NCBI RefSeq assembly: GCF_001194135.2
Contig: NC_068983.1
Location: forward strand, 94,912,604-94,976,603
Source: Octopus bimaculoides
Lineage: Eukaryota
DNA: 64,000 nucleotides
Direction of reading: 5' to 3'
Part shown: positions 19,914 through 58,440 of the stretch, piece after piece
Layout of the letters: every line of letters begins with the position of its first letter
Numbering within the stretch: the first letter of the stretch is position 1
Notes under the pieces: generated by a model
Told to the model about the DNA's origin: nothing
Seen by the model: the letters and a program-made list of their open reading frames with translations, nothing else
Database searches by the model: none
Translations under genes and position numbers: made by a program

Positions 19914-19976
<63 letters not shown>

Positions 19977-26301: not shown

Positions 26302-26361
<60 letters not shown>

Positions 26362-27619: not shown

Positions 27620-27656
<37 letters not shown>

Positions 27657-28261: not shown

Positions 28262-28441
28262 TAAGTGGTAGGTTTGCCTCGATCCTTCAGGGGTAAGTGA
28301 CTATGACATAATATACAAAATGACTCATTACATAACCTAAACCTCTACACTGACTCATTTCACAAGCTCCACATAATATAACAACGGCTATCTAGTCCAA
28401 CGAAAATGCTTTTTCTTGTATTTGTCACTCCATTCTCCAAG

Positions 28442-28481
<40 letters not shown>

Positions 28482-39793: not shown

Positions 39794-39825
<32 letters not shown>

Positions 39826-42800
39826 CAATGTATGGTGGGCTTCCTTCATTTAACATCTATCAAATTCCACTCACAAGGATTTGGTTGGCTTGGGGCTATT
39901 GTAGGAGATATTTCCCCAAGGTACTACACAGTGAGACTGAATCCGAAACCATGTGGTTGGGAACCAATCTTCTTAACCACACCTGCACCTATATATAATA
40001 ATATTCTATCCAGGCATTTACATTTCTAGGACCTTCTAAGCCACAAGGGTAGAGATTATAAATGAAGAACTATATCAAAAATGGTGATAGAAATTATTAC
40101 AACTATTTTATCAAGATATATAATCTGAAAGATTGTGTTTAAACATTCTGTTGTATACTAGTGAAATAATTTTGTCCATTTAGAATGCACACTATTATAG
40201 ATCCATTACTAAGCTGGCAGAATTGTTAGCACATCTGTCAAAAGTCTTAGTAGCATTTCTTTCGGTTCTTTATGTTCTGAGTTCAAATTCTACCAAGGTC
40301 AACTTTACCTTTTGCTTTTGCAGCTTGATAAAATAAGTAGCAGTCAAGAACATGAGTAGCCTCTCCACCTCAAATTATAGTAGGTACAAGGATCTGATCC
40401 AGTCCCTGACATACTTGACACATTGTCCCAAAATGTTTTTGGTACGAGAAACACACATCCTCAGGACTACTTATAAACCTTTATTGTATATGACTTAATA
40501 AACAATTCTTTTGTGATTCTTTATGCTTATGGCTAACAAGATAAGCTAGCTGGTATTTTATCTTCATTGTGTATTTTATTACAGCAAGGAATTGAGTCTG
40601 CTCCACTGTTTCCTATCTTGGTTGAAAGTGAGGGTTCACAGAGAGTTCCTGCAAACAATAATGTACTACAGCCAAGTTCAAGTTCAGCTGATGGTGGAAG
40701 TGAATCTGTAACAACACAAAATAAAGTCGACTCCAGTGTAACAGCACCAGCAAGCACTTCTGAGGGAGAAGAAATGCAAGATGGGGCCACGTAAGTCAGG
40801 CTTTTTTTAAAAAATAAATCTCCAAATTATTTACAACATTGAGATTTGTTGCAAACAACGTCTCTTAGTCTTGAGTTCTTTTTGTTATAGTTGTAATGTG
40901 ATTACTACTGATTGTTATGCAGTGTGTTCTATAGTCTTTGTGATATGGTTGTAACTCAGTTAATACTGAATATGTTATTATGTGGATTGTCATATATCTT
41001 TTGTGACATAGTTGTAACATATAAAGTTTGTGCAAAAAAAGAGCAATTAACTGTTTTTTAAAAAACCAAATTTTCGCTTTACAATTTAATGAAACTTATC
41101 TCCTTCAATATAATCCCCTCTCCTGTTGGTAACATCACTTTCAACTTTTTCTTATTGTTTTGGAACATGTCCTGATGCATTTTCAAGAACAGTGTGCTAT
41201 TCATGTAGTGAAGTTTTTTGATTTCCTCTGTTATCTAAAATCAGTGATCTTTCAGACTGGGTGTCAACTTTGGGAATGCAAAAACATAAGCAACGGCTAA
41301 ATCTAGAGCAGGGCACCAACGTTTTGGCAAAACATCATGGATAACAAGTGACATGTGAGAAGATGCATTATGTTGCCTCATCCTAGTTTTGTTTATCCAT
41401 TCTCTTGCATTGTCTCTCTCAAACACCTCTAGACATCCAAGTAAAATTGTCTATTGATTGTCTGGTCAAATGGAAGAAACTTGTGATAAAAGACACCCTT
41501 CCATTCAAAGAAAATGTTTCAGCAACTAAGACATACCTGTTTTGGACACAACAACAGTTTCCCATCTAATTGCATTGAATACCATTTTGTTTTCATTAAA
41601 ATAGCAGAGATTTATATTTATCATCTGTTATTATAGTTTCAAAAAAGTGTTATTAGTATTCAAACAATCAAACTGACTGATTGTTACTCTGTTCTGTTTT
41701 GTTTGTCTCTCAGCAGATTTAGCACAAATATTTTGGTAGCATGATGCATTTTAATTATTTTCTTTTAAAATCACATAGCAAGGACTTTTACAAATGCTTA
41801 TTTCTTGAGAAATTCATTGGCAGTACAGTGACAGTTTTTTTCAGATCACAGCACACACTTGTATATAATTGTTGTCCATTGTCTTTGAAGATAATCCTGG
41901 GTTGGAATCACTTTTGATGTCTTCTTCCTGTTTATAAATACTCATGTTACACACGAGATTGTGTGTAGCTGAAGCAGTTCTCTCCATAAGCCTCTTGCAA
42001 CATTAGAAAATTCTCTATATCCGTCATTGTTTAACTTATGGCAAACCACCAAGTGTACTAAACATACATTCATTCCGGTGCATATAGATTGATGACTAAT
42101 TGATATAATGTGATATGGTTATTATTAAACTGCAGGCCAATGTCACCCATACACAGCACTGTTATCACAAGCTCACCATGTCAGCTGATTGGTGCACTGT
42201 CTTAAAAGATTGTTTCTTTTTGGACAAACTTCATATTTGTAACTATGGTAACACTGAGTGTGTTATAGTATTAATGAATATTGTATAATATTCTGATATA
42301 TGTAATATTTACATTTTGTATAATATTCTAATTCCCCACAGCACTGAAACCACTCATTCTGATACTAACATTTATTGCAATATATATTTCATAAAAATTT
42401 TAAAGCCTGTTTATGAATGTAAGAATTAATTCAATTAATATATTTGTTTAGTTCTGAACCTGTTTTTACTGAACAAGACTTAGTCAATCAGTGCCAAGAT
42501 GACTATGAAAATGGTGGATACAGCCCAAAACTTCTTCGCTTGGATGAATTGGAGTTTGATGCCATTGTCTTTGATCCTGTTGATGATTTGAAGAAATTAG
42601 AGCTAGCTCGAGAACAAGTGTTAACTACAGGTCGAGTCAAAGTAAGTTTATACTTAATTCTTTTTTTAATGACAACCAAAGGAAGAGGAGAAGTGCTATG
42701 ATCTTTGCAGACCCATCCAAACATTTGAATATTTATAGATTGATATCTGTAGGAAAATTTTGGAGGAGAGACTTCCAGAGGGTTGTAGTTCTGGGGGAAA

Positions 42801-45800
42801 AGAACTGTGAGTGTGAGATATAGGTACCATACAGTAGGAGTGGTGAGAAGAGGAGGAAAGATGAGTTAGTCAGTTCAGATTGCTAGTTCAAAGGAGACAA
42901 AGCCAATGTTGTATTGATTGAAAAGGCAGAGAAGAAACAGCATGTCTGTAAGCATGTGGTTGAAGTGTGTTCGTGATTGAAACTACATTAATCAGTTAAA
43001 TGACTTTCTGCTTTCAGTTTAGGATATTTATGTGTATAGCAGCAGCATGGTCATGTAGATGTCAGCACAGTATACCTGTGAGAGTCAAGCATACACACAT
43101 ATCTATTAATATCTGCATACATATCTATACATGTGCACACACATACTCACACACACACACAAATGCATAAAATATTTCTGAAAGTATGAATATAGTGTAG
43201 CTCAATAGATTTTTCAAATATGTGTTGGTTTATATAAATTTGCAAATCTATATCTTATTTGAACAACAGATGCCCACAGAAAATCTGTTTTTCCAGACAA
43301 TTTATTAAAGAATGATAAGGAGAAAGCAAAAACCCCCATTAAAATTCTTATCTTAGGCACAGCTGTGTTACTAATAATACACGTTTAAAATAAAAGCTGT
43401 TCCTCACACCATCATTTTCATTTTACATATCCATTTTTCCATTCTGACACAGGTTGGGCAGGCATTTTTCTAATACATTGTCTTCCTACCTGTGGTTCTT
43501 TGTATTCTGATACAAACAACAGAGGAAACATGACAATTTTTGTTACTGTGTATGTCATATTTTCTTCAGCTTGTTTTTTTGGTTGGCTGTCCTTCCTATT
43601 GCCAACTATTTTAGAGTATGGACTGGGTGTATTTTATCATGCCAGTGATACTCAAGAGGTTTTCTGCGAGGACTACAGAAATTCTTTTACCATGTATCAG
43701 TTTTTGTTTTGAAAATGCAGTCAATGCATGCACAATCTTAAACCTTCCTAAAGAGGACCATCTGACTGACAGCAACAATTCACCGGCTCACAGTCTCTGT
43801 TCTTTTTTCTGTCTTTGTTGTTACTCGTATTTACTACACCACAATTTACTGCCACCCAGGCTCATCCAGTTATCCCATCTTTTATGCTATTTCTGCACCA
43901 AACACTTTATATAGTTTTTCTGTCCCATAAACATAACTATCTGGTATCCTGCCTTGCCTGTGTTTTTCCTGCAGGCACCAAAATAATGATAACATCCAAA
44001 TTGCTACCTAAGCAGCTGAAGGTTATTGGAATTGAGACTCTGCATTGTCATACTGCAGAAAAATGCAATCCTATATTCTGCAAGAATCCTAAGAAAAATT
44101 CTTGAGATTTGAGAAGATTCGCTGTTATCAAACTTCAAGGTAACATCCTTGCTAGCTAACATAGCATGTAACAGTTATAATAAATAATAATAGTGATAAT
44201 CCTTTCTATTAAAGGCACAAAGAACTTAATTTATTGACCATCAAAGTCAACCTCAGTGGAATTTGAAATGAAAGGTAATGATGGGTGAAATACTGCTAAG
44301 CATTTTATCCAGCATGCTAACAATTCTGCCTCCCTTTCTGTTCTAGCTGTAATGATCTCTGCTCCTTGTAGTTACTAAATTTTGAACCAACACTGCTTTG
44401 GGCCTACTTTTCTAAATAGACATTAAACTTCTCTGTTTTATACATGATTTGTTGATCATGTCACAGTTACTTATGTATGATTTCTCTGTTGTAGACAACA
44501 GAGTGAAGACCTTTTGAATGAATGGCCAGTATCTTGTATCCTATCACCAAATAGCATTGTTTCCATAGCAAAGATATTTCATTCTGTCCACCTGGGTTAT
44601 AAATGACCAATCCACTTGTACAAAGAATATTTTGTTAGCTTCTTCTGCAGCTTGAAATCTTCCCATTTACTGGAAGACAACCACAGTAAACCAGCCTTCT
44701 TACTTTTTATCAAACTCTTATCTTTGAAGATACACTGATCATTGAATACTTAAATCTCTGCCACTGCCATCTTAAGCACTATAAACTGATAGAAAATATA
44801 AGAAAAATCCTTAATTTACATGTTACAGCTCATATTGACTACATCAGATCCAATCTCACCTCTGATAATTATCTCCATTATTTGTTACAGACGCTTGAGA
44901 ATCAGGACTATCTTTTGCCTTTCACCTTTTACTTGTTTCAGTCATTAGACTATGACTATGCTGGGGCACTGTCTTGAAGAATTTTTAGTTGAATGAATGG
45001 ACTTCCATACTTATTTTTTTATAAACTTGGTACTTAATTTATCAGTCTGTTTTGCTAAACTGCTAGATTACGGGGACATAAATATACCAACACCAGATGT
45101 CAAGCAGTGGCGGGCAGCAAACACAGACACAAGAACATGCACACAAAAATGACAAGCTTTTTTTAGTTTCCATCTACCAAATCCACTCACAAGGCTTTGA
45201 TCAGCCTGGTGCTATAGTAGAAGACTCTTACCCAAGATGCCACACAGTGGGACTGAACCTGGAACCATGTAGTTGGGAAGCAAGCTTCTTACTACATAGC
45301 CATGCCTTACTGTTGTTTCATAGATTAGCCCCATGGTAGGAGTATTAGACTGACATAAGAGATTCTCAATGTTTCAGATTGGATTCACTTAACTACAGTT
45401 TTCACTTGAATTTGCTTCTTTCAGTTGGATATGGAGACTGAATTTGAAAAGAAGGCTCGTGAAGGGATGGGTGATGATGAAGCACAATTCAGTGTTGAAG
45501 TTGCTCTTGACCAACAAGCCTTCCTGTGGTCAAACAAGTATCGACCAAGAAAACCACGTTTCTTCAACAGAGTTCATACGGTAAGTTGTATTCCTTTTTC
45601 TTTATACATCTGTTATTGTTGATTCTGAACAGGAACTTGCACTATGCAACTCCATTGTGATATGTTTGTTTTTGTTCTTTTTTTTGTTTTATTGTTTTTT
45701 TGTAAAGGCTGTTGGCCTAGACATTGAAACAGTTTGGTAACTAAAGTATGATTGCTGCTGTGGCAAGAATATTATGAGTGACACCTTGAAATTTCTGCTC

Positions 45801-48800
45801 CATGATAGCTATATTTTTTGTGTTATCAAGCCACATTCATGGCACATCATTTAATGGTGTTATGTCATATATACATCGAATTTTCAAACACAGTAAATAT
45901 TGTATCTGTTTCACATCAAAATATTAGCCATTTATTGAATTTCATGCATTGAATTACTATTTTTATGATGAATTAAAAATCATTTACTTTTTATACATTA
46001 TTTACAATTGACGGATATTTGTCCTCATCTTATTTGTTGTTAACACAACATTTCGGCTGATATACTCTCCAGCCTTCATCAGGTGTCTTGGGGAAATTTC
46101 AAACCTGGGTTCTCATTCCTAAGGTATTTTCGATGTTGTTGTTATTATTATTATTCAGGTCACTGCCTGGAATCGAACTAATCTTGGGGTTAGCAGCCCG
46201 CTCTCTTAACCACTATGCCATATGCCCATGGGTATATCAGCCGATACGTTGTGTTAACAACAAACAAGATGAGGACAAATATCCGCCAATTGTAAATGAT
46301 GTAAATAATGTACATAATTCCTCATCTTTTAATTATAGAACTGGATTTACCTTTTATATTTAATAATTAATATCTATAATTTTAGTCTGGGTAGGCACTG
46401 TCTATTTTCCCTTGGCTGCTTATCTCTGAGTACCATAGAGAAAAATATAGAGGGAAAAGGCTAGACATACTTAACTTTTAGTGTCTCTTGAGCCAATTAG
46501 TTGTCTTTTCTCTCTCTTTCTCTGAGTGTGTATATATATATGATGATCATGGTCTTCTATGCAGATTCTGTCAACTAAGTTTATTCACAAGGCATTGTTT
46601 GGCCCAGGGCTACAGTGGAAGACACTTACCAAAGGTGCTGCCCAGTGGGGCTGAACCCCAAACTGTATTGTATCAAACCAAACTTCTTAACCATGCAGCC
46701 ATACTGTATGACTTTTTTCTTCATCCTTCAATGTGGCCTCAGCGACAATAGCAATCTACCTGTCCTTATCCACAGTAAAAAACAAATTATTCATAGATTT
46801 TGAGTTGATTTGCATGACACTTAGCAACATGTTAAGTAATGTTGGATTGAGTAGTTTCTTGATACCTTTCCCACTAAGTTTCATTGTTTTTTTAAAGTTT
46901 TTCTATATATTTTAATTATTCTTTTTGAGCATATGTAGTTTTATACATATGTGTATGTGAAATGTCTTGTTTTATGCAATGACTATATAAGCGAATGAAG
47001 AAAACGTTTCAGGAATACATATGTTTCAGTGTGTTCATACAGCAGACGGGTGTATTAAATTCTTGGGCATATTGCACATGATAGCTGACAGATGGACATG
47101 TTTCTTTCCTTAGAACAAATATCACTTCAGTAGATGTAAAGCATAGCTAAAAAGTTCTTTATGGTGACAGTTATAGACTGAGTTTCAAGGAAAATGGTTA
47201 ACTGAGAAGAAAGAAGTCTTACTTTAAATAGAATTAAATACTAAAACAATAATAAACATAACATTAGTTTCTTGGAACTGATCTCTGTCAATCACCTTTA
47301 ACTACTTCTTAATAGCCATCAAAATTTGATTGTTTCCTACAAATTTATGATACATTTCTCTTATATAAGTTTCAACAAAGGTGAATAAGTATTTTAGTTG
47401 AAGGGAGTCATATTTATATTTGAGTAAGTAATCACTTTTTGATTTCTTCCCATTTCAGGGCTTTGAATGGAACAAGTATAACCAAACTCATTATGACATT
47501 GATAATCCACCACCTAAAATTGTACAAGGATACAAATTCAATGTAAGTATCTCCCCTTCTCTGAAGGCTAGGAAATTAACCTTTCATCTCATTTTCATTA
47601 TTTTCTACCCATTATGTAACTTTTTTTTTTTTTTGGCATCAGTATGAATTCATTGGTTGGTTCAGAATATTTAGACACTCGAATGTGTGCTAACCCTGTT
47701 AGTATTTATTCACCTGAAATAGCCTCTATGAAACAGAACATCTCACATAATTTAATGTATTCACACTTAAATTAACATCTTCCATCAAAATTTTATTTAA
47801 GAAATGTTTGTTCAGTAATGTTCCAACACTGGCTTAATAATAGGATAATTAATTATTCTCAAATTCTCTTCATACTAATTGGAAAAAATGCATGGTATAT
47901 TTCATTAAAAATATGATCATGAAAACATTAACAAACATATTTCAGTGTTCAGATATTTTAATTAACAGGTATATCTACTATGGATCAGGTTTAATAGTAC
48001 TAAGAACTTGCTGGAAATATCTCTGGAGGAAATAGACTGTTGCACAGAATGCTTAAATGAAGAATTATTCATAAGCAAATATTCTTAAGAATTCAAGTTA
48101 GTAGATTCCTGAAGGAGTCTCTGAGTGTATGAGATGAGGGTCTTGAAAGAATAGTAATGAAAAACAAAACAACTTCCAGTAAGACTTTGGATGTAACAAA
48201 TAAACTCACATATTATATTCTATCGAAAAATTTGGTTAGTGTATAATTATTATGAATAAGGATTTCTAACATAAATACAAGACCAGAAGTTTGGGAGTAG
48301 GTGTTAGCTGATTAAATCAATCCTAGTATTTGAGTTGGTTGGTTAATCCATATTACTTCATAAGGAGTATAGGGCCAGTTTCCCAGTTTCTCTAGCATAT
48401 ATATATTCTTCCCTGGACAGGACACCAGCCCATCGCAAGGTTATTCATTTTTACCTGTTGAGTGAACTGGAGCAACATGAAATGAAGTATTTTGTTCAAA
48501 AACACAACGCATCACCAGATCGAGGAATCAAAACCATGATCTTATGATCATGAGTTCAACACTCTAAACACTGAACCCAGTATTTGACTGGTACTTTATT
48601 TTATCAACCTCAGAAGAATGAAAGGCAATGTTGGCCTGAGTGGGATTCAAGCTTAAAATGAAAAAAGAAAACCATAAATAGCACAAGGCATGAAAATTAT
48701 AGTTAGTTAAATCAACTCAAATACTTAACTGTACTTATTTTATTAATTCCAGAAAGATAAAAGACAAAGTTGTGTCAAGCAGAATTAGAAACTGATATTG

Positions 48801-49004: not shown

Positions 49005-49040
<36 letters not shown>

Positions 49041-52000
49041 TTCTACTAAAGGCACAAGGCCTGAAATTTGTGGGGAGTGGACTAGTCAATTACATTGACC
49101 CCAGTTTTCACTGGTACTTAATTTATTGATCCCAAAAGGACAAAAGGCAAAGAACCATCCAGTGGTTCTTGAGATATCTTGTCCACAGACAAACAAACAA
49201 ACATGACTGAAAACAATACCTCTGCCTTCACTAAGATGGAGGTAATAATGATTTCAAATTTTGGCACAAGCCCAGCAATTTCGGGTGAGTGGGAAGTCAA
49301 TTACATTGACCCCAGTGTTCAACTGGTACCTATTGTATCAACCCTGAAAGGATGAAAGGCAAAGTCAACTTTGGTGGAATTTGAACTCAGAACCTGAAGA
49401 CAGATGAAATGCTGCCAAGCATTTTGTCTGGCATGCTAATGATTCTGTCAGCTCATTCTTTCTACTATAGACTGAAGACCTGAAATTTTGGGGGAGGAGG
49501 AGTCAAATTGACCCCAGTGCTCAACTGGTACTTATTTCGTCATTCTGAAAAGGATGAAAGGCCAAGTCAACCTCAGTAGATTTTGAACTCAGAACGTAAA
49601 GACAGACGAAATGCTGCTAAGCATCTTGGCCAGCATGCTACCAATTTTACATTGGTAGCATGCTGGACATTCCACTCTGAGTCACCAAATCATCTCATCT
49701 TCTCCACTATCTTATGTCTCCTCATACACTACACCAGCCTCTCATACTCTCACAACCTACTCAACTACTTGTCATCTCTTTCTCTCTCACATAAATATCC
49801 TTCCCCTATTTATTATATTATCATTACTGTTCTGCTGTTCTTCACCACCATGTGTTATTGGTCATCCCATCAATTTATCCATTGTTCACTACAAACACCT
49901 CTCAATACCTGTTTTTCAGTCATATTCACCCCTTTACCCATTCCCCATTTTTCACTCTCCCAATCTCTAATCACCCACATTCCCAGTTTTACCTCTATTC
50001 ATTTCTGCTCACCTCATATCTTAGGTGGGGGAGGGTCCACCTTGATCACCTCCACCCACCCTCTAATCTAAAGGGTGAGTTGCTATATAACACTTCTACA
50101 GCAAGAACCCTGTTCTGGTTTGGCCCCTTCCTCTCTTACTTTAAACCTCATCACCTTGCATAAAGCTGCAGTTCTCAAATTTACAAGATCACCTCAGTAC
50201 AGCAGGAAATTTATTCTATAATGAGATTACAATCACATCATGACAATACTCTAAAATGAGGTATTTGGGACACATTGATGTATGAAGTGTTATTTGATGT
50301 ATGAAGTGTTATTTGATATATGAAGTGAGTAAGAAGGTTAACAGTTACGGAGCAGTGATATATCAATCACCAGTGTTTTAATGCAAACAATTATTGAAAG
50401 AAAAAAATTTGGGTCTCTTTTCAGATATTCTATCCTGACCTTATAAATAAAGCTGATACTCCAGAATATGCTTTGGTAAGTTTTTCCCACATTTATTTCT
50501 GCAAAACTCTTCTGAGACATTATATTTCAAAAAATAAATTAATTTACTAATTAATATTGGACTTTCACACTCCTAAACTATATGACAAGCATGGATTGTT
50601 GTTCCTTTTCCGAGACAGACATAGTTACAACTACAGATGGAACAAATAAAAATTTACTAAACCTTCTCTGAAAAGCAGTCTTGGAAACTGATTTCTATGC
50701 CGAGTTTAACCTTTAGCACATTGCATTTTTTTCTAGAATTACCGACGTTGCCTTCTTGTGCAGGTGGCACGTAAAAAACACCATTTTGAGCGTGGCTGTT
50801 GCCAGTACCGCCTGACTGGCCTTCGTGCCAGTGGCACGTAAAAGCACCCACTACACTCTCAGAGTGGTTGGCGTTAGGAAGGGCATCCAGCTGAAGAAAC
50901 TCTGCCAAATCAGATTGGAGCCTGGTGTAGCCATCTGGTTCACCAGTCCTCAGTCAAATCGTCCAACCCATGCTAGCATGGAAAGCGGATGTTAAACGAT
51001 GATGATAATGATAATGTTTCCCCTGTCACTGCCCTGTTGTTACAGGGGAGAAAACTCATACAGTGACATGATGCACCTACAGTGTGCTAAAGGTTAATGT
51101 AATTTGTTTTATATATGAAAAGACATAGTTTATGATTAATATATTGGAAGTATGATCATAAACATCATTGAAACATAATGCAGTTATATTGTATGCAATG
51201 ATGAATGACAATGAAACGTGGAGCAGTGTTATTACATTGGTATTACACATGTGATGTATGACAGTGACCCTTCATAATGTGTCATAAGTATGGTGGTATA
51301 TTCTCTGTTTTATCATTATCATTTTAATATTCACTTTTCTATGCTTGCCTGGGTCAGATGGAGTTTATTGAAATAGACTCTCTGTGGCTGGATGTCCTTC
51401 CTATCACCAGCCCTTACCTGTTTCTGATCAAGGTAATATCTCCCCATGGCCAGACATGTTTACACAGAATATTGGAAATCACTCAACATCAGAATAAGAA
51501 GACGCAGACACACAAACACACACAAATCCACTTACGAGGCTTTAGTTGGCCGAAAGTGCCACACTGGGACTGAACCCAAAAATCATATTGTTGGGAAGCA
51601 AAAACCTTACTCACACAGCTATGCCCAATGCTCCATAAATGGGTTGATGGCTGATGCATCATAAATGTTGTGATGTGTGTCTGACATGTGAGGTAGTAAT
51701 ATAGTAAAATGTACCAACATAGAGCAATCATACAGTATGATGCATGCAAGTAAAACAATTGTATCTGGCTATATTTGTTTTATAACTGGGTGATGTTTGA
51801 GGTGGGGTTGTGAATGGATCCGAGTGAGAGATAGACTAATTAAGAATTTTGAGAAGTTAATTGACATAGATTATTAAAATATTTCATGAGAAAAACCTTT
51901 ATATCTAATCTAGTATTTCCTAACCTTTTCGTTCTTGGGGAAACCTTGAAATACAATTCCATATCTCTGGAAAACTGTATAAAAAAAAATTATTATATAT

Positions 52001-53635
52001 CGTTATTAACTTTGCTTGACTGACAAATTTGGTTCTCTTTCTATTTCATAGTTGATTATTTAAAAGTAAGGTCATCCAGGCTGCAAAATCAGTTCCCCTA
52101 ACAGAATGATTCCTATGTATGCTAGCATGGTATAAATAGCTGCACAATGTATCTCATTTTGAAAACATTTGTTTCATTCCTTCTGAAAATTGATTTTTAC
52201 TTCAGTGATATAATTGTCTCCTCTCTCTTTACAGACACCTTGCAATGACAATAAAGATTTTGCACTGTTACGCTTTCATGCTGGGCCACCCTATGAGGTA
52301 AATATTGTTTTATATCCATTTCGAGACTGTTGTTCTTGAAGTAGAGATGTTTTTGGGAGTATTATTTTACCTTACTGATTTTAAAAATTGGTAGACTGAA
52401 GTGGAGTTTAAGAATATTACTAAAAAGCTAGTTACTAGTGTGTGTATCCTACTTTTTTAGATATATTTTTCATATTTTCCATATCTCAACATCTATCCTT
52501 AATGGTAATTGTGCTTTCAGCTGTTTGGCAATTAATCTCAATAAAGCTAGCCCTTCTATTAGGATTACTTATTGAATGGCAAAGAGAGAGTGTAGGTGTT
52601 TGTGAAAAGATAGTCTATTTTTTTATGTTGAGTAGGGAATACTTTTTTGTAGTAGTTCAATGTTTACAGGGTCCTAACATTCCATTCTGGTTAAACACCA
52701 ATAAGGAAGGGCACCCAGCTGTAGAAACTCTGCCACATCAGATTGGAGCCTGGTGCAGCCATCTGGTTCGCCAGTCCTCAGTCAAATCGTCCAACCCATG
52801 CTAGCATGGAAAAAAGGACGTTAAACGATGATGATGATGATGAAGCTGTCCAAAATATCAAGGATCAGTTATTTGCAAGCATTCACCAGGACCATTGACT
52901 GTTGAAGAGAGGGTGTAACTATTTGCAATGGAAGCAATACAACTATTTTGTCATTCCCCATATATCTGCATTATAAACTGCTTATTTTGAACAAATGTAT
53001 TGATAGAGTTTGTTACTCCACAAGATGGCATGTGAGCCATAAAGGCTGCATCAGAATTTCTTTTGGACTAAATTCTGATGATCTATTGATAGAAAAGGTG
53101 CATTCCCATCAGGGATACATAAAATGCTCTCTCTCTCTTTCTCATCAAAATCGTCAGCGCATTAGGCTTATCAGTGACTAGTTGGATAGCTGGTTTCCTA
53201 ATGTTCAAGTTGCAGATGATATATTAATGTTCATCACAGTACTCCCTGTACCTCTTGTACCATAGTTGTGCTCCCCATGAATACCAGTCTGCTATTGATA
53301 AACACAATAAGAAATAAATTTATCTGAGATGTTTTAGATACTCATTCCTACAAATTTAAATTATAAGGTTGTGTTGTCCAAAACCACAAGAAATAGGTTT
53401 CTACTCTCTTGGCCCTAAAAAATAAAACCAGAAATGGAAATAAAAAAAAAACTTTTTAATGAATATGTACTTGAATATTGTAATAACTGTGTGAATTCTC
53501 CTTTTGCAGGATATTGCATTCAAAATTGTCAACCGTGAATGGGAATATTCATACAAGCGAGGCTTCCGCTGTCAGTTCCAGAACAACATTTTCCAACTGT
53601 GGTTTCACTTCAAACGTTATCGCTACCGGCGATAG
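10231..53635 (+). CDS. CACTIN: Cactin (spliceosomal C-complex factor), 19 coding exons, 709 aa (whole-gene span)
   Basis: Exons join in phase via GT-AG introns to 2130 nt. Conserved Cactin motifs [79 protein letters not shown], and C-terminus [14 protein letters not shown]. Confidence 0.97.
12050..12960 (-). mobile_element. CR1/Jockey-group LINE fragment
   Basis: QVR....(W)[10 protein letters not shown] motif near 12200-12270 on the minus strand; heavily decayed. Confidence 0.4.
13040..14100 (-). mobile_element. RTE-clade LINE fragment (RT core)
   Basis: Decayed GSVLSPLLF / LLYADDLVLIAES region at about 13890-13990; RTE-type 3' region toward 13100. Confidence 0.65.
14275..14478 (+). CDS. 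CACTIN: Cactin exon 2
   Basis: Acceptor TTTGCAG; [28 protein letters not shown]...[14 protein letters not shown](R); donor GTAGGT; phase 2 in and out. Confidence 0.88.
15529..15598 (+). CDS. CACTIN: Cactin exon 3
   Basis: TTTTCAG; [23 protein letters not shown]; donor GTAATA. Confidence 0.93.
15724..16942 (-). mobile_element. Degenerate Tc1/mariner-superfamily element with DUF4817-type HTH
   Basis: TIRs TACAGGGTGTCCCCAAAA / TGCAAAATGTCCCCAAAA; ORF remnant [25 protein letters not shown] resembles the N-terminus of DUF4817 transposases. Confidence 0.7.
17777..17830 (+). CDS. CACTIN: Cactin exon 4
   Basis: TTTCAG; [18 protein letters not shown]; donor GTAAAC. Confidence 0.93.
18530..19436 (-). 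mobile_element. Internally deleted Tc1-like (DUF4817) element with about 55-bp TIRs
   Basis: TIR TACAGGATGCAGCAAAATGATCTGACATATTTGTAGGTTTAATAAAAGTGAAAT matches the other end; [26 protein letters not shown] joined to [22 protein letters not shown]. Confidence 0.85.
19739..21174 (+). repeat. Identical 70-bp direct repeat flanking Cactin exon 5 (19739-19808 and 21105-21174)
   Basis: TATGTTTTTCTTTTTTGTGTTTATTCTTTGTTATCAAAGGCTCCAACGATGATTGCATCAAATCAGAAGA present twice without mismatch. Confidence 0.92.
20604..20750 (+). CDS. CACTIN: Cactin exon 5
   Basis: CTTACAG; [28 protein letters not shown]...KMAENR; donor GTCAGT. Confidence 0.95.
21610..21820 (+). mobile_element. tRNA-derived SINE, family A (GGCGAGCTGGCAGAAACGTTAGC head)
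   Basis: B box GAGTTCAAATTCC, tail GGCCTTGTGCCT.GAGTAGAAA. Other copies at about 2312-2521(-), 10416-10616(-), 31899-32010(+), 40209-40345(+), 44210-44330(-), 63474-63566(-). May correspond to described octopus OK/OR SINEs; not verified. Confidence 0.85.
22583..22654 (+). CDS. CACTIN: Cactin exon 6
   Basis: ATTGCAG; [24 protein letters not shown]; donor GTATCT. Confidence 0.93.
22804..23352. other. Assembly gap (549 N)
   Basis: Run of N between a (TA)n tract and the 3' side of the Penelope-like fragment. Confidence 1.
23453..24128 (-). mobile_element. Penelope-like retroelement, 5'-truncated: Cys-rich linker + GIY-YIG endonuclease
   Basis: 209-aa ORF: [21 protein letters not shown], CxxxxCxx[11 protein letters not shown]...YVWET(AQS)..[33 protein letters not shown]. 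Flanked by (TA)n plus gap and by (TG)n. Confidence 0.85.
24376..24438 (+). CDS. CACTIN: Cactin exon 7
   Basis: Acceptor TTTTATAAAAG (AAG); [21 protein letters not shown]; donor GTAAGT. Confidence 0.92.
24761..25207 (+). repeat. Diverged about 160-bp direct duplication (24761-24921 and 25048-25207)
   Basis: Both start CATGTGTATAAATATAAACAAACTAA, share TTAGAACAGCAGAAATACTGGGTAAATTAC and end AAAAATTTGTCA. Confidence 0.85.
26303..26360. repeat. (CA)n microsatellite (representative)
   Basis: Pure CA run. Other microsatellites: (CA)n about 17895-17930, 28913-28938; (TA)n about 18486-18512, 19930-19975, 27620-27680, 28228-28258, 28445-28475; (GA)n about 30065-30092; (TG)n about 24163-24190; (AAT)n about 49005-49040. 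Confidence 0.95.
27690..28100 (+). mobile_element. Possible non-autonomous Helitron/HINE-like element
   Basis: 3' part GTGAAGTTTCATCAAGG...ACAAACACACAAACTTGCCATTTATTA resembles HINE/Lep1-type ends as recalled; internal about 35-bp direct repeat at about 27726 and 27896; preceded by a long (TA)n. Confidence 0.35.
29042..29096 (+). CDS. CACTIN: Cactin exon 8
   Basis: TTTTTCAG; [18 protein letters not shown]; donor GTAAGC; phase 1. Confidence 0.94.
29270..29580 (+). mobile_element. RTE-clade LINE fragment (RT N-terminal motifs)
   Basis: [23 protein letters not shown]...[20 protein letters not shown], a decayed QFGF..STTDAIF.VRQLQEK..AFVDLEKA..EWLV.AVQAMY. Confidence 0.75.
30262..30350 (+). CDS. 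CACTIN: Cactin exon 9
   Basis: CATACAG; (A)[29 protein letters not shown]; donor GTAAGT. Confidence 0.95.
33009..33162 (+). CDS. CACTIN: Cactin exon 10
   Basis: GTTTCAG; [33 protein letters not shown]...LDPLSR; donor GTGAGA; phase 1. Confidence 0.95.
33600..34430 (-). mobile_element. RTE-clade LINE fragment
   Basis: Same decayed RT C-terminal sequence as the 1190-1560 and 59060-59500 fragments, followed by a (GAT)n tail near 33515. Confidence 0.5.
35506..35652 (+). CDS. CACTIN: Cactin exon 11
   Basis: ATTACAG; (D)[25 protein letters not shown]...QGGEGIDI; donor GTAAAT; phase 1. Confidence 0.95.
35762..36181. repeat. 60-bp-unit minisatellite, about 7 copies, in Cactin intron 11
   Basis: Unit GTCCTGTTATCCTCTACTATCATTCTCTTTCCTGTTGCTATCATTATTATCACTTCTCTT; consecutive 60-nt lines nearly identical; 10-N gap inside (35873-35882). 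Confidence 0.95.
37137..37246 (+). CDS. CACTIN: Cactin exon 12
   Basis: GCTACAG; (G)[36 protein letters not shown]; donor GTAATT. Confidence 0.95.
40585..40790 (+). CDS. CACTIN: Cactin exon 13
   Basis: ATTACAG; [12 protein letters not shown] followed by S/T-rich low-complexity linker; donor GTAAGT; phase 2. Confidence 0.92.
41080..41560 (-). mobile_element. Mariner transposase C-terminal remnant
   Basis: [25 protein letters not shown], a decayed HDNAPAH / SPDLAPxDFFLFPKL. Confidence 0.55.
42452..42641 (+). CDS. CACTIN: Cactin exon 14
   Basis: TGTTTAG; [10 protein letters not shown]...[11 protein letters not shown]...[14 protein letters not shown]; donor GTAAGT. Confidence 0.92.
44925..45305 (-). 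mobile_element. tRNA-derived SINE, family C (CORE-like CCTTGGGCAAGTGTCTTCTACTATAGC body, internal (TG)n), near full length
   Basis: Head GGC(A/G)TGGCT.TGT.GTAAG; 3' end GACTGAAACAAGTAAAAG. Partial copies at about 2925-3110(-), 17390-17640(+), 20000-20135(-), 26558-26760(+), 32815-32940(-), 39130-39270(+), 39830-39990(-), 46555-46705(-), 51540-51625(-). Confidence 0.8.
45425..45580 (+). CDS. CACTIN: Cactin exon 15
   Basis: CTTTCAG; [26 protein letters not shown]...[15 protein letters not shown]; donor GTAAGT. Confidence 0.95.
45994..46316 (-). mobile_element. tRNA-headed non-autonomous retroelement with hammerhead ribozyme and inverted terminal copy
   Basis: Minus strand: tRNA-like head 46227-46158 (A box TGGCATAGTGG, B box AGTTCGATTCC), (AAT)n, body, hammerhead 46087-46042, tail; 68-nt inverted copy of the tail at 46232-46299. 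Confidence 0.8.
46042..46087 (-). ncRNA. Minimal type-I hammerhead ribozyme motif
   Basis: GACAC-CUGAUGA-A-GGCUG(GAGAGUAUAU)CAGCC-GAA-A-UG-U-U-GUGUU: stem I GACAC/GUGUU, intact core, 5-bp stem II, 1-bp stem III as in Penelope-associated hammerheads. Confidence 0.8.
47459..47542 (+). CDS. CACTIN: Cactin exon 16
   Basis: ATTTCAG; [28 protein letters not shown]; donor GTAAGT. Confidence 0.97.
49039..49640 (-). mobile_element. Three tandem family-A SINE copies after an (AAT)n tract
   Basis: Copies at about 49039-49145, 49255-49455 and 49460-49640, same orientation. Confidence 0.8.
50425..50475 (+). CDS. CACTIN: Cactin exon 17
   Basis: TTTTCAG; [17 protein letters not shown]; donor GTAAGT. Confidence 0.95.
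50737..51016 (+). mobile_element. SINE with RTE-type (GAT)n tail (longest young copy of this family)
   Basis: GGCACGTAAAAGCACCCACTACACTCTC...CCATGCTAGCATGGAAAGCGG.TTAAACGATGATG. Other copies at about 17985-18170(-), 20190-20385(+), 22071-22180(-), 27040-27452(+, two), 31475-31720(-), 34720-34962(+), 39010-39107(+), 52686-52843(+), 58556-58740(-). Confidence 0.85.
52235..52297 (+). CDS. CACTIN: Cactin exon 18
   Basis: TTTACAG; [21 protein letters not shown]; donor GTAAAT. Confidence 0.96.
53510..53635 (+). CDS. CACTIN: Cactin exon 19 (terminal coding part)
   Basis: TTTGCAG; [41 protein letters not shown], stop TAG 53633-53635. Confidence 0.97.
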   Translation, partial: DIAFKIVNREWEYSYKRGFRCQFQNNIFQLWFHFKRYRYRR

Positions 53636-55817: not shown

Positions 55818-56770
55818 TTAACGGCAAATAAGATTTACATCTTTTAATTGTTGATAAATAATTTTCATATTTCTTGGCATCACATGATGTCCACTTATTA
55901 TGTTTTTGTAAGTACAGCCAGTGTGTTGTTGGTTATGGATTGTAAACTTGCTACTGTCTATTCTTGTTGCATTCACTCGGTTTGCAAGCATCCCTGTTAT
56001 ATAAACATCTTCAAGCCAGAAGCGCTTTCCATTAAATGATTCTGCATACAATTCTGGTACTAAGTCACCTGAAATTAGATAAGCAGTCCCAGAGACATAC
56101 TCAGGAAACTCATTCTTTGGATATTTTGATATGGGTGTGTACCATTTTGATGAACTATCTCTGATTGGTGCAACATGTTTAAAAAGTAAACCCATGATAA
56201 ACCGAGAACGTTTCATGTTCATAAGTGTTTTCTCTAACAATGGAAGATTTATATACATATCATCATCTGTTTTCAACACAAATTTTACTTTTCTACATGA
56301 AGAACTCACCCAACGTAGATAAGCAATTGACTTTAAAGATAAGTTTGCATAATGATCAATATAGTTCTCTTGTACAATATCACCATATTTTACACTTTCT
56401 TCATGAATATCATCTTGAACACCAGGACCATGTGTAACACCTTCAAAAAAAACCATCTTAAAGTTTGAATTATTCCTAGCATATTGACCCCACGTCTCTC
56501 GTATGGTATTTCGACGCAGTATATTTATTGGGGCTGAACACACAGCAACAAGGATCTGAACAGAGTCAGAACAATTATTTGTCAAATGAATGTATGAGAA
56601 ATGATATGACTGTTGGTTTATGATAGAAACATCTGAAAATGGAAGAAATCGTAACCACCTGCCTGAAAGTATATTCATGTAGGTTTCTGGATTGATTTGG
56701 TACATGAGAATAATGTACACAAAAATGGCTATAATTAATATTGTCATCCATATGCGAATCTTCTTTTTAC
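55818..56770 (-). CDS. Beta-1,3-galactosyltransferase (CAZy GT31 / Galactosyl_T family, B3GALT1/5-like), main exon
   Basis: N-terminal TM segment; GT31 motifs RRNTIRETWG, DIVQENYIDHYANLSLKS, KTDDDMYINL (DxD), FPEYVSGTAYLIS, EDVYITG. Acceptor CATTTCCAG ends at 56771; frame stays open upstream of the ORF-track Met (KKKIRIW). Confidence 0.92.
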
Positions 56771-56982: not shown

Positions 56983-57489
56983 AAATAGTATTTTACTCTA
57001 CTTTTGGTATTTTAGTTCTAATTTTTCTACCTTGTTTTGTATTTATGTGCTTACCTGTGTGTGTGTTTGTGCATGCATAAATATATATTATATCATATTA
57101 TAATAATATTATTATATCTGCAAGTAGTATTATTATCAAAGTAAGAGTACTCAATACCTAATGTAGAGTAAATATTTCTTTTAACATTTGAAATATTTCT
57201 TTATGAAGAGAACATCAGAGGATTACTTTATAGGGTTGAAACTTTATGGTAATACAACAGTTATCTCCACCTTACAACAGCAAAAAACCTGTTTAGAGGG
57301 AAATTACTCTGAAGGAAAAGTGATAGTGTAGAAATAGATTCTCTAAACCTCCTGCAGACAACTTCTCTAATCCCTGTAGCATAAAATGCACTAGATCAGC
57401 ACTGTATAGCGGTTGATACCTGAATGAGTATCTGACTATAAAGTCCATGTAAAAAACAAGCACAACATATTCAATAGCAGAGTTGGCCA

Positions 57490-58440
57490 GTTTTCTCTGT
57501 TGCTGTAGATGCGTTTAGTAATGGTTTTGTTGACATCAGAACTGTTCAAAGATGGTTCCAAAGCTCTTGTTCAGGAGATGACAGCCTTAAAAATAAACCA
57601 AGAGGTAGGCCAAAATCAGTTATTCAGCATGATGGATCAAATGCTTTAGTTGAACAAAATCCGAGAGCAAAGGTTCGAAAACTTTCATCAGAATTCCAAA
57701 CATTTCGCACAACTGTCTTTGGACACCTGTAAAAATTTGGAAAAGTCAAGAAAACAGATAGGTTTATTCCATATCAAATGAACGAGATTCAAAAAACAGA
57801 CACCTTGAAGTATGCTCCTTATTACTTTCTTGACTGGAAAAAAACATTTTAGCATCAAATCATTACTTGTGATGAGAAATGGATACTCTTTGACAACAGC
57901 AGGAGAACAAGACAGTGATTAGATGCAGGAGAGTCACCTAAACACTACCCAAACCCACCATTGCCTCCTAAAAAGCTAGTGGTCACTGTATGGTAGTCTG
58001 TGAAGGGAGTTATTCATTATTCATTTTTGCAACAAGGAAAATCAGTAACAGTAACATCATATTGCCAGGAAATTGATTATATGCATGAAAATTTGAAAAA
58101 GAAGCAACCCAGACTAGTGAACAGAGATGGCCCAGTTTTGCTCCACAACATCGCACGTCCTCAAACTCCTCAAGCTATGGTCCAAAAGTTGCAAAGCCTG
58201 AATTATGAGATTTTGCAGAATCCGCCCTATTCCCCTGATATCTCTCCTACTGATGATCACTGATTTAAGCATTTTGAGCTTTTCATAAGCAATAAAACAT
58301 TCTTAAATAGAGAAGAGGTAATTGAAGCATTCGGACAGTTTATCACAGCAAAAGATGAATTTTATTTTTAAAGATGAAATATATGGCATAGAGAAACATT
58401 GGGTAAACGTCATAAATGAACATGGATCATACTTTGATTA
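57490..58440 (+). mobile_element. Degenerate mariner (Mos1/SETMAR-like) transposase
   Basis: RTVQRWF, PRGRP, IITCDEKWILFDN, KKLVVTVW, GVIHYSFL, VLLHNIARPQ, NPPYSPDISPTDDH; stops and frameshifts. Confidence 0.88.

What the first reader, a model, noticed from the sequence alone, without database searches (positions are those of the whole stretch)
45994..46231. tRNA-headed small retroelement carrying a minimal hammerhead ribozyme, in Cactin intron 15
Seen (minus strand): a tRNA-derived Pol III head at 46227-46158 (A box TGGCATAGTGG, GGG-CT-GCT-AA-CCC anticodon-like arm, B box AGTTCGATTCC), an (AAT)n spacer, a short body, then a complete type-I hammerhead at 46087-46042. It has stem I GACAC/GUGUU, core CUGAUGA, stem II GGCUG/CAGCC, GAAA, and a 1-bp stem III (A-UG-U) with U at the cleavage position. 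The second copy in the window reads ACGU here, the palindrome. Established: minimal hammerheads with palindromic stem III that can act as dimers are found in Penelope-like pseudo-LTRs and animal retrozymes, and Schistosoma Sm-alpha is a precedent for a Pol III SINE-like element with a hammerhead. Inference: this is a Pol III-driven, self-cleaving non-autonomous retroelement, possibly undescribed in cephalopods, that could make monomeric or circular RNAs.
Basis: partly seen in the sequence, partly recalled or inferred. Interest (0 to 1): 0.85.

Follow-up and report, generated by a model that had tools for sequence, protein, structure and literature searches.

The report
tRNA-headed retroelement with Penelope-type hammerhead
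A roughly 340-base retrotransposon insertion in an intron of the Cactin gene joins a tRNA-derived RNA polymerase III promoter to the ribozyme-bearing 3' end typical of Penelope-like elements. It may be the first SINE that lives off that transposon class, but only this one copy could be examined.

Summary
The sequence features are real. On the minus strand, 46042-46087 is a complete minimal type-I hammerhead. It is the only descriptor hit in the window, and none with stems of 4 bp or more appeared in 300 random windows. At 46169-46220 lies the window's only box A plus box B pair (none in 1000 random windows). tRNA finders and Rfam recognise neither feature.

It abuts the head 11 nt upstream of box A. 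[quoted passage not shown] They show variable stem I sequences, palindromic helix III inserts, nearby RT/GIY-YIG ORFs and inverted partners. None has a tRNA head.

Best reading: a retrocopy of one Pol III transcript (tRNA-derived head, spacer, PLE 3' module), inserted by PLE machinery. It is either a PLE-dependent SINE or a one-off template-switch chimera. No cephalopod genome was reachable, so family status is untested.

Self-cleavage and circular RNAs are unsupported. Both copies span the cleavage site, and the palindrome has decayed in the only complete ribozyme.

The parts
46232..46319 (+). Inverted, 5'-truncated partner copy. It holds the 3' half of the hammerhead (from loop 2; reads GAUA-CG-U-U-GUGUU) plus the 3' tail. 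Its truncation point abuts the 5' end of the main copy.
   Evidence: the repeat finder arm, 88 nt, 89%. Alignment shows 10 mismatches, 4 of them in the inner 61 nt.
46228..46231 (-). CCAT, the first bases of the main copy. The junction with the inverted copy lies 11 nt upstream of box A, which is the distance expected for a Pol III start site.
   Evidence: Sequence. The expected distance rests on established knowledge of SINE 5' ends; this reading is an inference.
46158..46227 (-). tRNA-derived head. Box A lies at 46220-46210, a CUGCUAA anticodon-loop-like arm follows, and box B lies at 46179-46169. The cloverleaf is degenerate.
   Evidence: Only A+B pair in the window, against 0 in 1000 random windows. 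Single-box counts. ARAGORN and Rfam are negative.
46135..46155 (-). (AAT)4(AAC)3 simple-repeat spacer between the head and the 3' module.
   Evidence: Sequence.
46088..46134 (-). 47-nt body immediately upstream of the hammerhead. It is presumed to be the start of the PLE-derived 3' module.
   Evidence: Sequence. No similarity elsewhere in the window.
46042..46087 (-). Minimal type-I hammerhead: stem I 5 bp, core CUGAUGA, unpaired A, stem II 6 bp with an 8-nt loop, GAAA, helix III of one A-U pair around UG, and U17. Cleavage would fall between 46047 and 46046.
   Evidence: Descriptor scan with random controls. Fold. Same architecture in 66 loci from other hosts.
46035..46050 (-). Hairpin UGUUGU-GUUA-ACAACA. 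It overlaps the cleavage site and the 3' strand of stem I, competes with stem I in the fold of the whole transcript, and is identical in both copies.
   Evidence: MFE of the 256-nt transcript. Arm alignment.
45978..46041 (-). 3' tail downstream of the ribozyme. It is shared with the inverted copy up to the same terminus.
   Evidence: Tails of 40-55 nt follow the same ribozyme in L047 and L004.
45975..45979 (-). T5 run, the first T4-or-longer run after the putative start (252 nt). It sits exactly where the arm homology ends and is a possible Pol III terminator.
   Evidence: A T4-free run this long starts at 14% of random positions, so the evidence is weak.

Best explanation
The 342-bp structure at 45978-46319 is one retrotransposition event made by the reverse transcriptase and GIY-YIG endonuclease of a Penelope-like element (PLE).

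The template:
- It was a roughly 255-nt RNA polymerase III transcript with three parts.
- The 5' part is a tRNA-derived head with internal box A and box B promoters.
- The middle part is an (AAT)n(AAC)n linker.
- The 3' part is a roughly 160-nt module copied from the 3' end of a PLE: 47 nt, a minimal hammerhead and a 64-nt tail.

The insertion (inferred):
- Both nicked target strands primed on the RNA's 3' end.
- One cDNA ran to the 5' end of the RNA and became the main copy (46231 to about 45976).
- The other stopped after 88 nt and became the inverted arm (46232-46319).
- The two were joined head to head.

Interpretation:
- Most likely the element is a SINE that depends on a PLE in the way ordinary SINEs depend on LINEs, through a shared 3' end.
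- In that case the hammerhead is present because it belongs to the borrowed 3' module, perhaps as part of what the PLE enzyme recognises. It need not be there because the SINE must cut itself.
- In this old copy (arms 7-11% diverged) the catalytic core is intact. The helix III palindrome needed for dimeric activity has mutated from ACGU to AUGU at a CpG.

Shown: the motifs, their non-random nature, the inverted truncated partner, and the PLE association of this hammerhead type. Inferred: Pol III transcription, the PLE enzyme as the mobiliser, the double-priming mechanism and family status.
For: The features are real and unique:
- The hammerhead is the only descriptor hit in 128 kb of sequence (both strands). 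300 random windows gave no hit with stems >=4 bp.
- The A+B box pair is unique in the window, against 0 in 1000 random windows.
- The two unique features lie 133 nt apart on the same strand in the right order. For independent placement that has a probability of about 0.001.

The insertion architecture fits a PLE:
- An 88-nt inverted copy of the 3' end abuts the head. Its inner end falls in the middle of ribozyme loop 2, which marks a truncated cDNA rather than a designed terminal repeat.
- Craig et al. [quoted passage not shown]
- Cervera & de la Pena 2014 (PMC4209133) report paired min-HHRs 100-700 bp apart on opposite strands.

The ribozyme matches the PLE min-HHR traits listed:
- Helix I is 5 bp.
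- The G10.1-C11.1 pair is present.
- The 15.2-16.2 positions are palindromic (CG) in the inverted copy.

The hammerhead type is PLE-associated in other hosts:
- 66 metagenome loci carry the same core and stem II.
- 30% of the 47 distinct ones have a stem I of >=4 bp in register, against 4% in permutations, with at least 10 different stem I sequences. 15 of 18 have self-complementary helix III inserts (CG, UA, CAUG).
- An unselected sixth stem II pair covaries.
- ORFs with RVT_1 and GIY-YIG lie upstream on the same strand (L007, both above the Pfam cut-offs). GIY-YIG-like ORFs end 105 nt before the ribozyme (L021, L011, L037).
- Seven loci have an inverted partner upstream.
- In L004, L034 and L047 the DNA between the arms is the longer copy's own sequence, with at most about 28 nt of filler. 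By analogy the head belongs to the main copy.

The ends fit a Pol III transcript:
- The junction lies 11 nt upstream of box A.
- The first T-run falls exactly at the end of the homology.
- No direct repeat of 6 nt or more flanks the head plus spacer, which argues against a separate later SINE insertion.
Against: - Only one copy exists in 64 kb, whereas three ordinary short repeat families have 5 to 12 or more copies each.
- None of the 66 related hammerhead loci has a tRNA or A/B-box head within 450 nt. The combination is therefore not a general feature of this ribozyme class.
- The head does not fold as a tRNA and is missed by Rfam and ARAGORN.
- No target-site duplication flanks the structure.
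- No PLE ORF or matching 3' end is in the window, so the partner is hypothetical.
- The T-run evidence is weak (P about 0.14).
- The simple-repeat linker could be the tail of a separate RNA.
- No cephalopod genome, Repbase or Dfam could be searched.
Confidence: 0.45

Rival explanations
1. One-off chimeric retrocopy. A PLE reverse transcriptase began on the 3' end of a PLE RNA, copied about 160 nt, then switched template to an unrelated Pol III RNA (a tRNA-derived SINE or tRNA-like transcript ending in an AAT/AAC repeat) and copied it to its 5' end. The analogy is U6-L1 chimeras. The head and the ribozyme are then joined at this locus only and do not form a family.
For: - The 5' end lies at the Pol III start distance, and no TSD separates the parts.
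- There is a single copy in the window.
- No tRNA head occurs in 66 related loci.
- The simple repeat sits exactly at the junction between the parts.
- PLEs are reported to retrotranspose host sequences in trans (PMC8557442).
Against: - No T-run, the expected 3' end of a Pol III RNA, is present at the internal junction.
- No other copy of the head's putative source family is in the window.
- A T5 run lies exactly at the 3' end, and there is no T4 within 252 nt, as a selected Pol III unit would need (weak).
- This reading cannot be separated from the SINE reading without genome-wide copy counts.
Confidence: 0.3
2. Nested or adjacent independent insertions. An older head-to-head pair of truncated PLE 3' ends was later hit, exactly between the two copies, by a very short tRNA-derived SINE (head plus AAT/AAC tail, 46231-46135). 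The reverse order is also possible: PLE copies landing on either side of an old SINE whose microsatellite tail attracted them.
For: - PLEs have an insertion bias for microsatellites and for existing PLE copies (PMC8557442; PMC6765202).
- A head plus simple-repeat tail looks like a minimal SINE.
Against: - No direct repeat of 6 nt or more flanks the head plus spacer, although the supposedly older arms are still 93% identical over 61 nt.
- The insertion would have to hit the arm junction to within 0-4 nt.
- In comparable inverted pairs the inter-arm DNA is element-derived, with at most about 28 nt of filler.
- No other copy of such a short SINE is in the window.
Confidence: 0.12
3. An ordinary 5'-truncated copy of an autonomous PLE whose own 3' UTR happens to contain a tRNA-derived segment. 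The head is never used as a promoter, and the truncation point near box A is a coincidence.
For: - PLE insertions are mostly 5'-truncated (PMC8557442; PMC8969392).
- Most min-HHRs in genomes are thought to be such fragments (PMC4209133).
Against: - Truncation 11 nt upstream of box A is what a transcription start predicts. It is a coincidence of about 1-3% for random truncation.
- None of the 66 PLE-type loci has a tRNA-like segment upstream of the ribozyme.
Confidence: 0.08
4. A DNA transposon (MITE or foldback) with 88-bp terminal inverted repeats, an assembly artefact, or a chance motif cluster.
For: 88-nt inverted arms with a 166-nt centre.
Against: - There is no TSD.
- The arms are the truncated end of a directional unit, because half of the ribozyme lies in the arm and the other half in the unique centre.
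- The arms differ at 10 of 88 positions, so this is not a misassembled duplicate.
- Chance is excluded.
Confidence: 0.03

Closest known systems
Minimal hammerheads at the 3' end / pseudo-LTR of Penelope-like elements (Cervera & de la Pena 2014, PMC4209133; Lunse et al. 2017, cited in PMC6765202)
   Same: - Type I topology, with a 5-bp helix I.
- An unpaired nucleotide before G10.1-C11.1.
- Helix III reduced to A-U around a 2-nt palindrome (CG in the inverted copy).
- A partner on the opposite strand about 170 nt away.
- The same core plus stem II sequence occurs next to RT/GIY-YIG ORFs in other animals.
   Different: - No PLE ORF and no tandem pseudo-LTR here.
- The sequence upstream of the ribozyme is a Pol III head, not a PLE 3' UTR or ORF.
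- None of the 66 comparison loci has such a head.
Schistosoma Sm-alpha / Sj-alpha SINE-like elements (Ferbeyre 1998 and Laha 2000, as summarised in PMC6765202 and PMC8490949)
   Same: A short non-coding retroelement that combines a Pol III promoter with a type-I hammerhead on the same strand.
   Different: - Sm-alpha is described as carrying an active hammerhead and as occurring in tandem arrays, where an upstream unit transcribes the next.
- Here the ribozyme is the minimal PLE type, the copy is solitary, and it has an inverted truncated partner.
- The phylum is different.
- I could not read the primary papers.
Metazoan non-LTR retrozymes (Cervera & de la Pena 2020, PMC7229834; Li et al. 2026 preprint, 10.64898/2026.07.22.740005)
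   Same: Non-autonomous, hammerhead-bearing, and proposed to depend on PLEs.
   Different: - Retrozymes are head-to-tail tandem repeats whose transcripts are cut twice and circularised.
- Here there is no tandem direct repeat, only one complete ribozyme, and a Pol III head that retrozymes are not reported to have.
Non-autonomous PLE derivatives sharing 3' ends with autonomous families (e.g. MRC1 / Chlamys in Chlamydomonas, PMC8557442)
   Same: A short non-coding element mobilised through a PLE-like 3' end, with PLE-style complex insertions.
   Different: Those have no small-RNA-gene head and no hammerhead.
tRNA-derived SINEs with LINE-derived tails (Ohshima & Okada model), and small-RNA-headed non-autonomous LTR elements (Cassandra, Helenus, Ajax; PMC10886601)
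   Same: A modular design: a Pol III small-RNA-gene head fused to the 3' recognition module of an autonomous retrotransposon.
   Different: The borrowed module is from a Penelope-like element rather than a LINE or an LTR element. I found no description of that combination in the searchable literature.

Membership tests
Hammerhead ribozyme, type I | Conserved core CUGANGA ... GAAA, an A15.1-U16.1 pair and H17 not G. | tested here: met
   CUGAUGA, GAAA, the A-U pair and U17 are present at 46082-46047.
Hammerhead ribozyme, type I | Helices I and II formed by flanking and internal complementary strands, open at helix I. | tested here: met
   Stem I is 5 bp and stem II is 6 bp. The MFE of the 46-mer contains both (z = -2.6). 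In the full transcript stem I competes with a local hairpin.
Hammerhead ribozyme, type I | Match to the curated Rfam hammerhead covariance models. | tested here: not met
   No hammerhead family matches at E<=10 on 701 nt, 216 nt or the whole window. These models expect a real helix III.
Hammerhead ribozyme, type I | Self-cleavage activity. | not testable with these tools
   Needs in vitro transcription of monomer and dimer constructs.
PLE-type minimal hammerhead (Cervera & de la Pena 2014) | [quoted passage not shown] | tested here: met
   Helix I is 5 bp, a bulged A is present, and the G-C closing pair is present.
PLE-type minimal hammerhead (Cervera & de la Pena 2014) | Palindromic 15.2-16.2 / loop 3 allowing a dimeric helix III. 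| tested here: inconclusive
   The main copy has UG (AUGU, self-pairing only through G-U). The inverted copy has CG (ACGU). A CpG-to-TpG change implies an ancestral palindrome. 15 of 18 related loci are palindromic.
PLE-type minimal hammerhead (Cervera & de la Pena 2014) | Location in the 3' end or pseudo-LTR of an element encoding RT plus a GIY-YIG endonuclease. | tested here: inconclusive
   No such ORF was seen next to the element, and the rest of the window was not scanned for RT/GIY-YIG domains. The same ribozyme sequence type lies downstream of RVT_1/GIY-YIG ORFs in loci from other hosts.
Penelope-like element insertion | An inverted 5'-truncated copy immediately adjacent to the 5' end of the unit. 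| tested here: met
   46232-46319 is the reverse complement of 45978-46065 and abuts the unit. The same layout occurs in L004, L034 and L047.
Penelope-like element insertion | A partial tandem copy forming a pseudo-LTR. | tested here: not met
   No direct repeat of the element lies within 900 nt or elsewhere in the window.
tRNA-derived SINE (SINE2) | Internal Pol III promoter: box A and box B at tRNA-like spacing near the 5' end. | tested here: met
   TGGCATAGTGG and AGTTCGATTCC start 41 nt apart. The pair is unique in the window and absent from 1000 random windows. Box A starts at position 12 of the unit.
tRNA-derived SINE (SINE2) | Recognisable similarity of the head to a tRNA. | tested here: not met
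   ARAGORN and the Rfam tRNA model are negative. A resemblance to tRNA-Ser(GCU) (AGTGGTTAAG, CTGCTAA) rests on my memory only.
tRNA-derived SINE (SINE2) | Many dispersed copies sharing the same ends. | not testable with these tools
   One copy in 64 kb. No genome of the source organism or its relatives was reachable.
tRNA-derived SINE (SINE2) | A 3' end shared with an autonomous partner element. | not testable with these tools
   The partner is inferred only from the ribozyme type and the insertion architecture.
tRNA-derived SINE (SINE2) | Target-site duplication. | tested here: not met
   No direct repeat of 7 nt or more flanks 45978-46319. TSDs are often not discernible for PLEs either (PMC8557442).
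Metazoan non-LTR retrozyme | Head-to-tail tandem units, each with a hammerhead, giving circular RNA. | tested here: not met
   There is no tandem direct copy and only one complete ribozyme. Circular RNA is not testable here.
MITE / TIR DNA transposon | Terminal inverted repeats plus a fixed-length TSD. | tested here: not met
   Inverted arms are present but there is no TSD, and the arms are a truncated part of a directional unit.

The most novel reading that the evidence does not exclude
This is a member of a propagating family of tRNA-headed, Pol III-transcribed SINEs that parasitise Penelope-like elements through a shared, hammerhead-bearing 3' module. That would be the PLE counterpart of the SINE-LINE partnership, and I found no description of it in the literature I could search.
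Probability: 0.4. Interest if true: 0.65.

Novelty: new variant of a known kind. Interest (0 to 1): 0.45.

Why it matters
How Penelope-like elements choose and copy their RNA, and what their ubiquitous minimal hammerheads are for, are both unsettled.

A small Pol III-driven passenger that carries only the last 160 nt or so of a PLE would define the minimal cis-element that the PLE enzyme needs. It would also let one test whether the ribozyme acts as a cutter or as a recognition structure.

It would extend the head-plus-borrowed-tail logic of SINEs to a third class of autonomous retrotransposon.

If it is a one-off chimera, it is still a clean example of the PLE inverted-pair insertion signature and of template switching by a PLE enzyme.

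As a by-product, the insertion places an 85-bp hairpin in a Cactin intron. This is relevant if the host is indeed a cephalopod with heavy RNA editing.

Tried and rejected
Standard finders:
- ARAGORN and Rfam were run at gathering and at E<=10, on the whole window and on 701-nt and 216-nt slices. They see neither the head nor the ribozyme.
- Relaxed ARAGORN gives only a poor cloverleaf.

Other copies in the window:
- blastn with word size 7 finds only the inverted arm and microsatellites.

Reaching the source genome or its relatives all failed:
- The 91-aa ORF across the element has no homologues.
- A Cactin N-terminal exon gave no hit.
- The Cactin C-terminus gave a best hit of 85% identity and no cephalopod.
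- Exact lookup of the neighbouring galactosyltransferase ORF was not on record.
- Element-specific 24-mer and 30-mer scans of the metagenome, viral and prokaryote collections gave zero.

Literature:
- No paper links hammerheads to cephalopod SINEs or tRNA-headed SINEs to PLEs.
- A search for a repeat sequence string gave nothing.
- Ferbeyre 1998 and Lunse 2017 are not held.

Other checks:
- TSD searches were negative.
- RNAcofold of two ribozyme copies was uninformative about the dimeric helix III.
- I did not build a covariance model from the metagenome loci. They were retrieved with 22 nt of the window's own ribozyme, so a score would be largely circular.
- The stem I pairing percentages are on sequences pre-selected for a stem I of 3 bp or more. 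The unbiased figures are those and the sixth stem II pair.
Full report
**1. What is in the sequence**

Read on the minus strand, the region has this order:
- An 88-nt segment at 46319-46232.
- CCAT.
- A 70-nt tRNA-like stretch at 46227-46158, with box A TGGCATAGTGG (46220-46210), a GGG-CUGCUAA-CCC arm and box B AGTTCGATTCC (46179-46169).
- (AAT)4(AAC)3 at 46155-46135.
- 47 nt of unique sequence.
- A hammerhead motif at 46087-46042.
- A 64-nt tail, then a T5 run at 45979-45975.

The repeat finder shows that 46232-46319 is the reverse complement of 45978-46065 (88 nt, 89%, 166 nt between the arms). A gapped alignment confirms this, with 10 mismatches of which 4 fall in the inner 61 nt.

The inner end of the arm falls inside loop 2 of the ribozyme. 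The arm therefore contains only the 3' half of the hammerhead plus the tail.

**2. Is it more than chance?**

- A descriptor for minimal type-I hammerheads finds exactly one site on both strands of the window, this one. The descriptor requires CUGANGA, an optional bulge, a G10.1-C11.1-closed stem II, GAAA, 0-6 nt, U, H and stem I. The site has a 6-bp stem II and a 5-bp stem I.
- In 300 first-order Markov random windows there was one hit with 3-bp stems and none with stems of 4 bp or more.
- The 46-mer folds into both stems (-12.7 kcal/mol, z = -2.6).
- A box A followed 20-60 nt later by a box B (at least 8 of 9 specified positions) occurs once in the window and never in 1000 random windows. 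Single boxes occur at about chance frequency.
- Two features that are each unique in 128 kb of sequence lie 133 nt apart, on the same strand and in the right order. This would happen about once in a thousand for independent placement.

Curated tools do not see either feature:
- ARAGORN finds nothing, and at 70% thresholds gives only a bad cloverleaf.
- Rfam gives neither a tRNA nor a hammerhead match at E<=10.

The head is therefore a degenerate tRNA derivative identified by its promoter boxes. The ribozyme is of the minimal kind that the Rfam models do not cover.

**3. What kind of hammerhead is it?**

Cervera & de la Pena (PMC4209133) define the minimal hammerheads of Penelope-like elements (PLEs) by four traits:
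- A 4-5-bp helix I.
- A G10.1-C11.1 pair.
- A palindromic 15.2-16.2.

They suggest these ribozymes act as dimers, and found only weak activity in vitro. The window's motif has the first three traits. The fourth is present in the inverted copy (ACGU) and lost in the main copy through a CpG-to-TpG change (AUGU).

A scan of metagenome contigs with only the core and five stem II pairs (CTGATGAAGGCTG-N6-14-CAGCCGAAA) returned 66 loci from host-associated samples.

Features that were not part of the search pattern behave as a ribozyme class should:
- Of 47 distinct sequences, 30% have a stem I of 4 bp or more in the right register after U-H. Permutations give 4% on average and at most 16%.
- There are at least ten different stem I sequences.
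- In 15 of the 18 with a stem I of 3 bp or more, the helix III insert is CG, UA or CAUG, which makes A-insert-U self-complementary.
- A sixth stem II pair, outside the pattern, is paired in 10 of 13 sequences with five pair types.

The stem I percentages come from pre-selected sequences and are not independent evidence.

These loci are PLE-associated:
- L007 has an ORF with RVT_1 and GIY-YIG, both above the Pfam cut-offs, upstream on the same strand.
- L021, L011 and L037 have a long ORF with a GIY-YIG-like motif ending 105 nt before the ribozyme.
- L047 has a GIY-YIG-like fragment between two inverted ribozyme-bearing arms.

**4. The inverted arm**

Craig et al. [quoted passage not shown] Cervera & de la Pena saw paired min-HHRs on opposite strands 100-700 bp apart.

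Seven of the 66 loci show an inverted copy of the ribozyme tail upstream. In L004, L034 and L047 the two copies end at the same 3' terminus. The DNA between the arms is the longer copy's own upstream sequence, with at most about 28 nt of filler.

The window's structure is the same layout: 3' ends outward, and one copy truncated at 88 nt. By analogy, everything between the arms, including the tRNA-like head, belongs to the longer copy.

Three points argue against a DNA transposon or an assembly artefact:
- The arm ends within the ribozyme.
- There is no target-site duplication.
- The arms are 11% diverged.

**5. Best explanation**

The locus is one retrotransposition event by PLE machinery. The template was a single RNA of about 255 nt whose 5' end is a Pol III start.

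The evidence for a Pol III unit:
- The junction with the inverted copy lies 11 nt before box A. That puts box A at position 12, as in typical tRNA-derived SINEs (established knowledge).
- The 3' end coincides with the first T4-or-longer run. This is weak evidence, with P about 0.14.
- No direct repeat of 6 nt or more flanks the head plus spacer, although the arms are still 93% identical over 61 nt. This argues against a later, separate SINE insertion.

The 3' 160 nt (47 nt, ribozyme, 64-nt tail) has the layout of a PLE 3' end.

I therefore read the element as a tRNA-headed SINE with a PLE-derived tail. It would be mobilised in trans in the way non-autonomous PLE derivatives that share 3' ends with autonomous families are thought to be.

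Both copies contain uninterrupted sequence across the cleavage site (46047|46046). The template RNA was therefore not cleaved. With one minimal ribozyme per transcript, self-cleavage in cis is not expected. In the fold of the whole transcript, the 3' strand of stem I is taken by a hairpin, UGUUGU-GUUA-ACAACA.

The ribozyme is more plausibly a passenger, or a recognition part of the borrowed module, than a processing device for this element. That last step is inference.

**6. Rivals**

- **One-off template-switch chimera.** This fits nearly all local evidence equally well. It differs only in predicting a unique junction genome-wide.
- **Independent nested insertions.** This requires a hit within 0-4 nt of the arm junction and no TSD.
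- **A truncated autonomous PLE with a tRNA-like 3' UTR.** This requires a coincidental truncation point, and no such case exists among the 66 loci.

Points against the SINE reading:
- There is one copy in 64 kb, while three other short repeat families have 5 to 12 or more copies each.
- No related hammerhead locus has a tRNA head.

**7. What could not be done**

No cephalopod genome, Repbase or Dfam was reachable:
- Protein-based routes found no close relative of the host. The Cactin C-terminus gave at most 85% identity. A Cactin N-terminal exon gave nothing. The neighbouring gene is not on record. An ORF across the element has no homologues.
- Element-specific DNA scans were empty.

The cephalopod origin is therefore unverified. 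The Cactin assignment is solid: the five C-terminal coding exons identified in the window, joined and used as a query, match CactinC_cactus proteins. The element lies antisense in the intron at about 45581-47458, the fourth-from-last coding intron. The label "intron 15" was not checked.

**8. Comparison with what is known, and novelty**

- The ribozyme and the inverted-pair architecture are known PLE features.
- A Pol III promoter plus a hammerhead on a SINE-like element is known from Schistosoma Sm-alpha and Sj-alpha (PMC6765202; PMC8490949).
- PLE-dependent non-autonomous elements are known as retrozymes and as MRC1-like derivatives (PMC7229834; 10.64898/2026.07.22.740005; PMC8557442).
- Small-RNA heads on non-LINE-dependent elements are known for LTR elements (PMC10886601).
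- The specific combination here is a solitary tRNA-headed unit with a minimal PLE hammerhead tail and a PLE insertion signature. I did not find it described.

I rate it a new variant of a known kind, conditional on family status. Interest is moderate at 0.45. The ribozyme itself is ordinary for an invertebrate genome. The possible SINE-PLE partnership is the interesting part, and it rests on one locus.

Noticed in passing
window 45975-46322, + strand: In the sense of the Cactin pre-mRNA, the insertion folds into an imperfect hairpin of about 85 bp (MFE -142.9 kcal/mol, z = -16.3). That is a long intronic dsRNA and a potential substrate for editing or dsRNA-processing enzymes.
   Followed up: partly
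window 24748-25207: The only Rfam tRNA hit in the window (24924-24995, minus strand, 34.9 bits; ARAGORN silent) sits between two direct repeats of about 175 nt (24748-24921 and 25035-25207, 84%). It looks like a tandemly duplicated unit containing a tRNA-like sequence.
   Followed up: partly
window, e.g. 10412-10606, 21609-21833, 49040-49646, 63461-63564 (family A); 6034-6201, 27270-27473, 31473-31728, 50830-51016, 52701-52858 (family B); 26563-26746, 39802-39979, 45150-45305 (family C): Three short dispersed repeat families (about 170-260 nt, 70-93% identity) have at least 10, 12 and 5 copies in 64 kb. Read on the minus strand, family A has a GAGTTCAAATTCC box-B-like motif and ends in ..GTAGAAAA, so it is probably an ordinary tRNA-derived SINE. 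None resembles the element studied.
   Followed up: partly
window 6188-9793 (-) and 55818-56747 (-): Two long uninterrupted ORFs flank Cactin. One is a TANGO6 homologue (ARM_TANGO6, TANGO6_N, RTP1_C1). The other is a Galactosyl_T family glycosyltransferase.
   Followed up: yes
window about 22800-23350: A run of N (an assembly gap) lies inside a Cactin intron.
   Followed up: no
window 19914-19993, 20380-20557, 26261-26430, 27615-27702, 28434-28521, 43075-43244: Sub-threshold Rfam matches to mir-297, mir-466, mir-1277 and similar families all fall on TG/TA-rich microsatellites. They are low-complexity artefacts.
   Followed up: partly
window 57478-58260 (+), 3391-4423 (+), 13031-13660 (-), 59078-59338 (-): Six-frame ORFs look like mariner-type transposase fragments and LINE reverse-transcriptase C-terminal fragments. 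This is judged by eye only.
   Followed up: no
L004 83-326; L047 2-640; L034 1420-1700: Metagenome contigs from other animal hosts contain near-perfect head-to-head pairs of truncated PLE 3' ends. Each member of a pair carries the same minimal hammerhead. In L047 the arms are 97% identical over 131 nt, suggesting a recent insertion in that host.
   Followed up: partly
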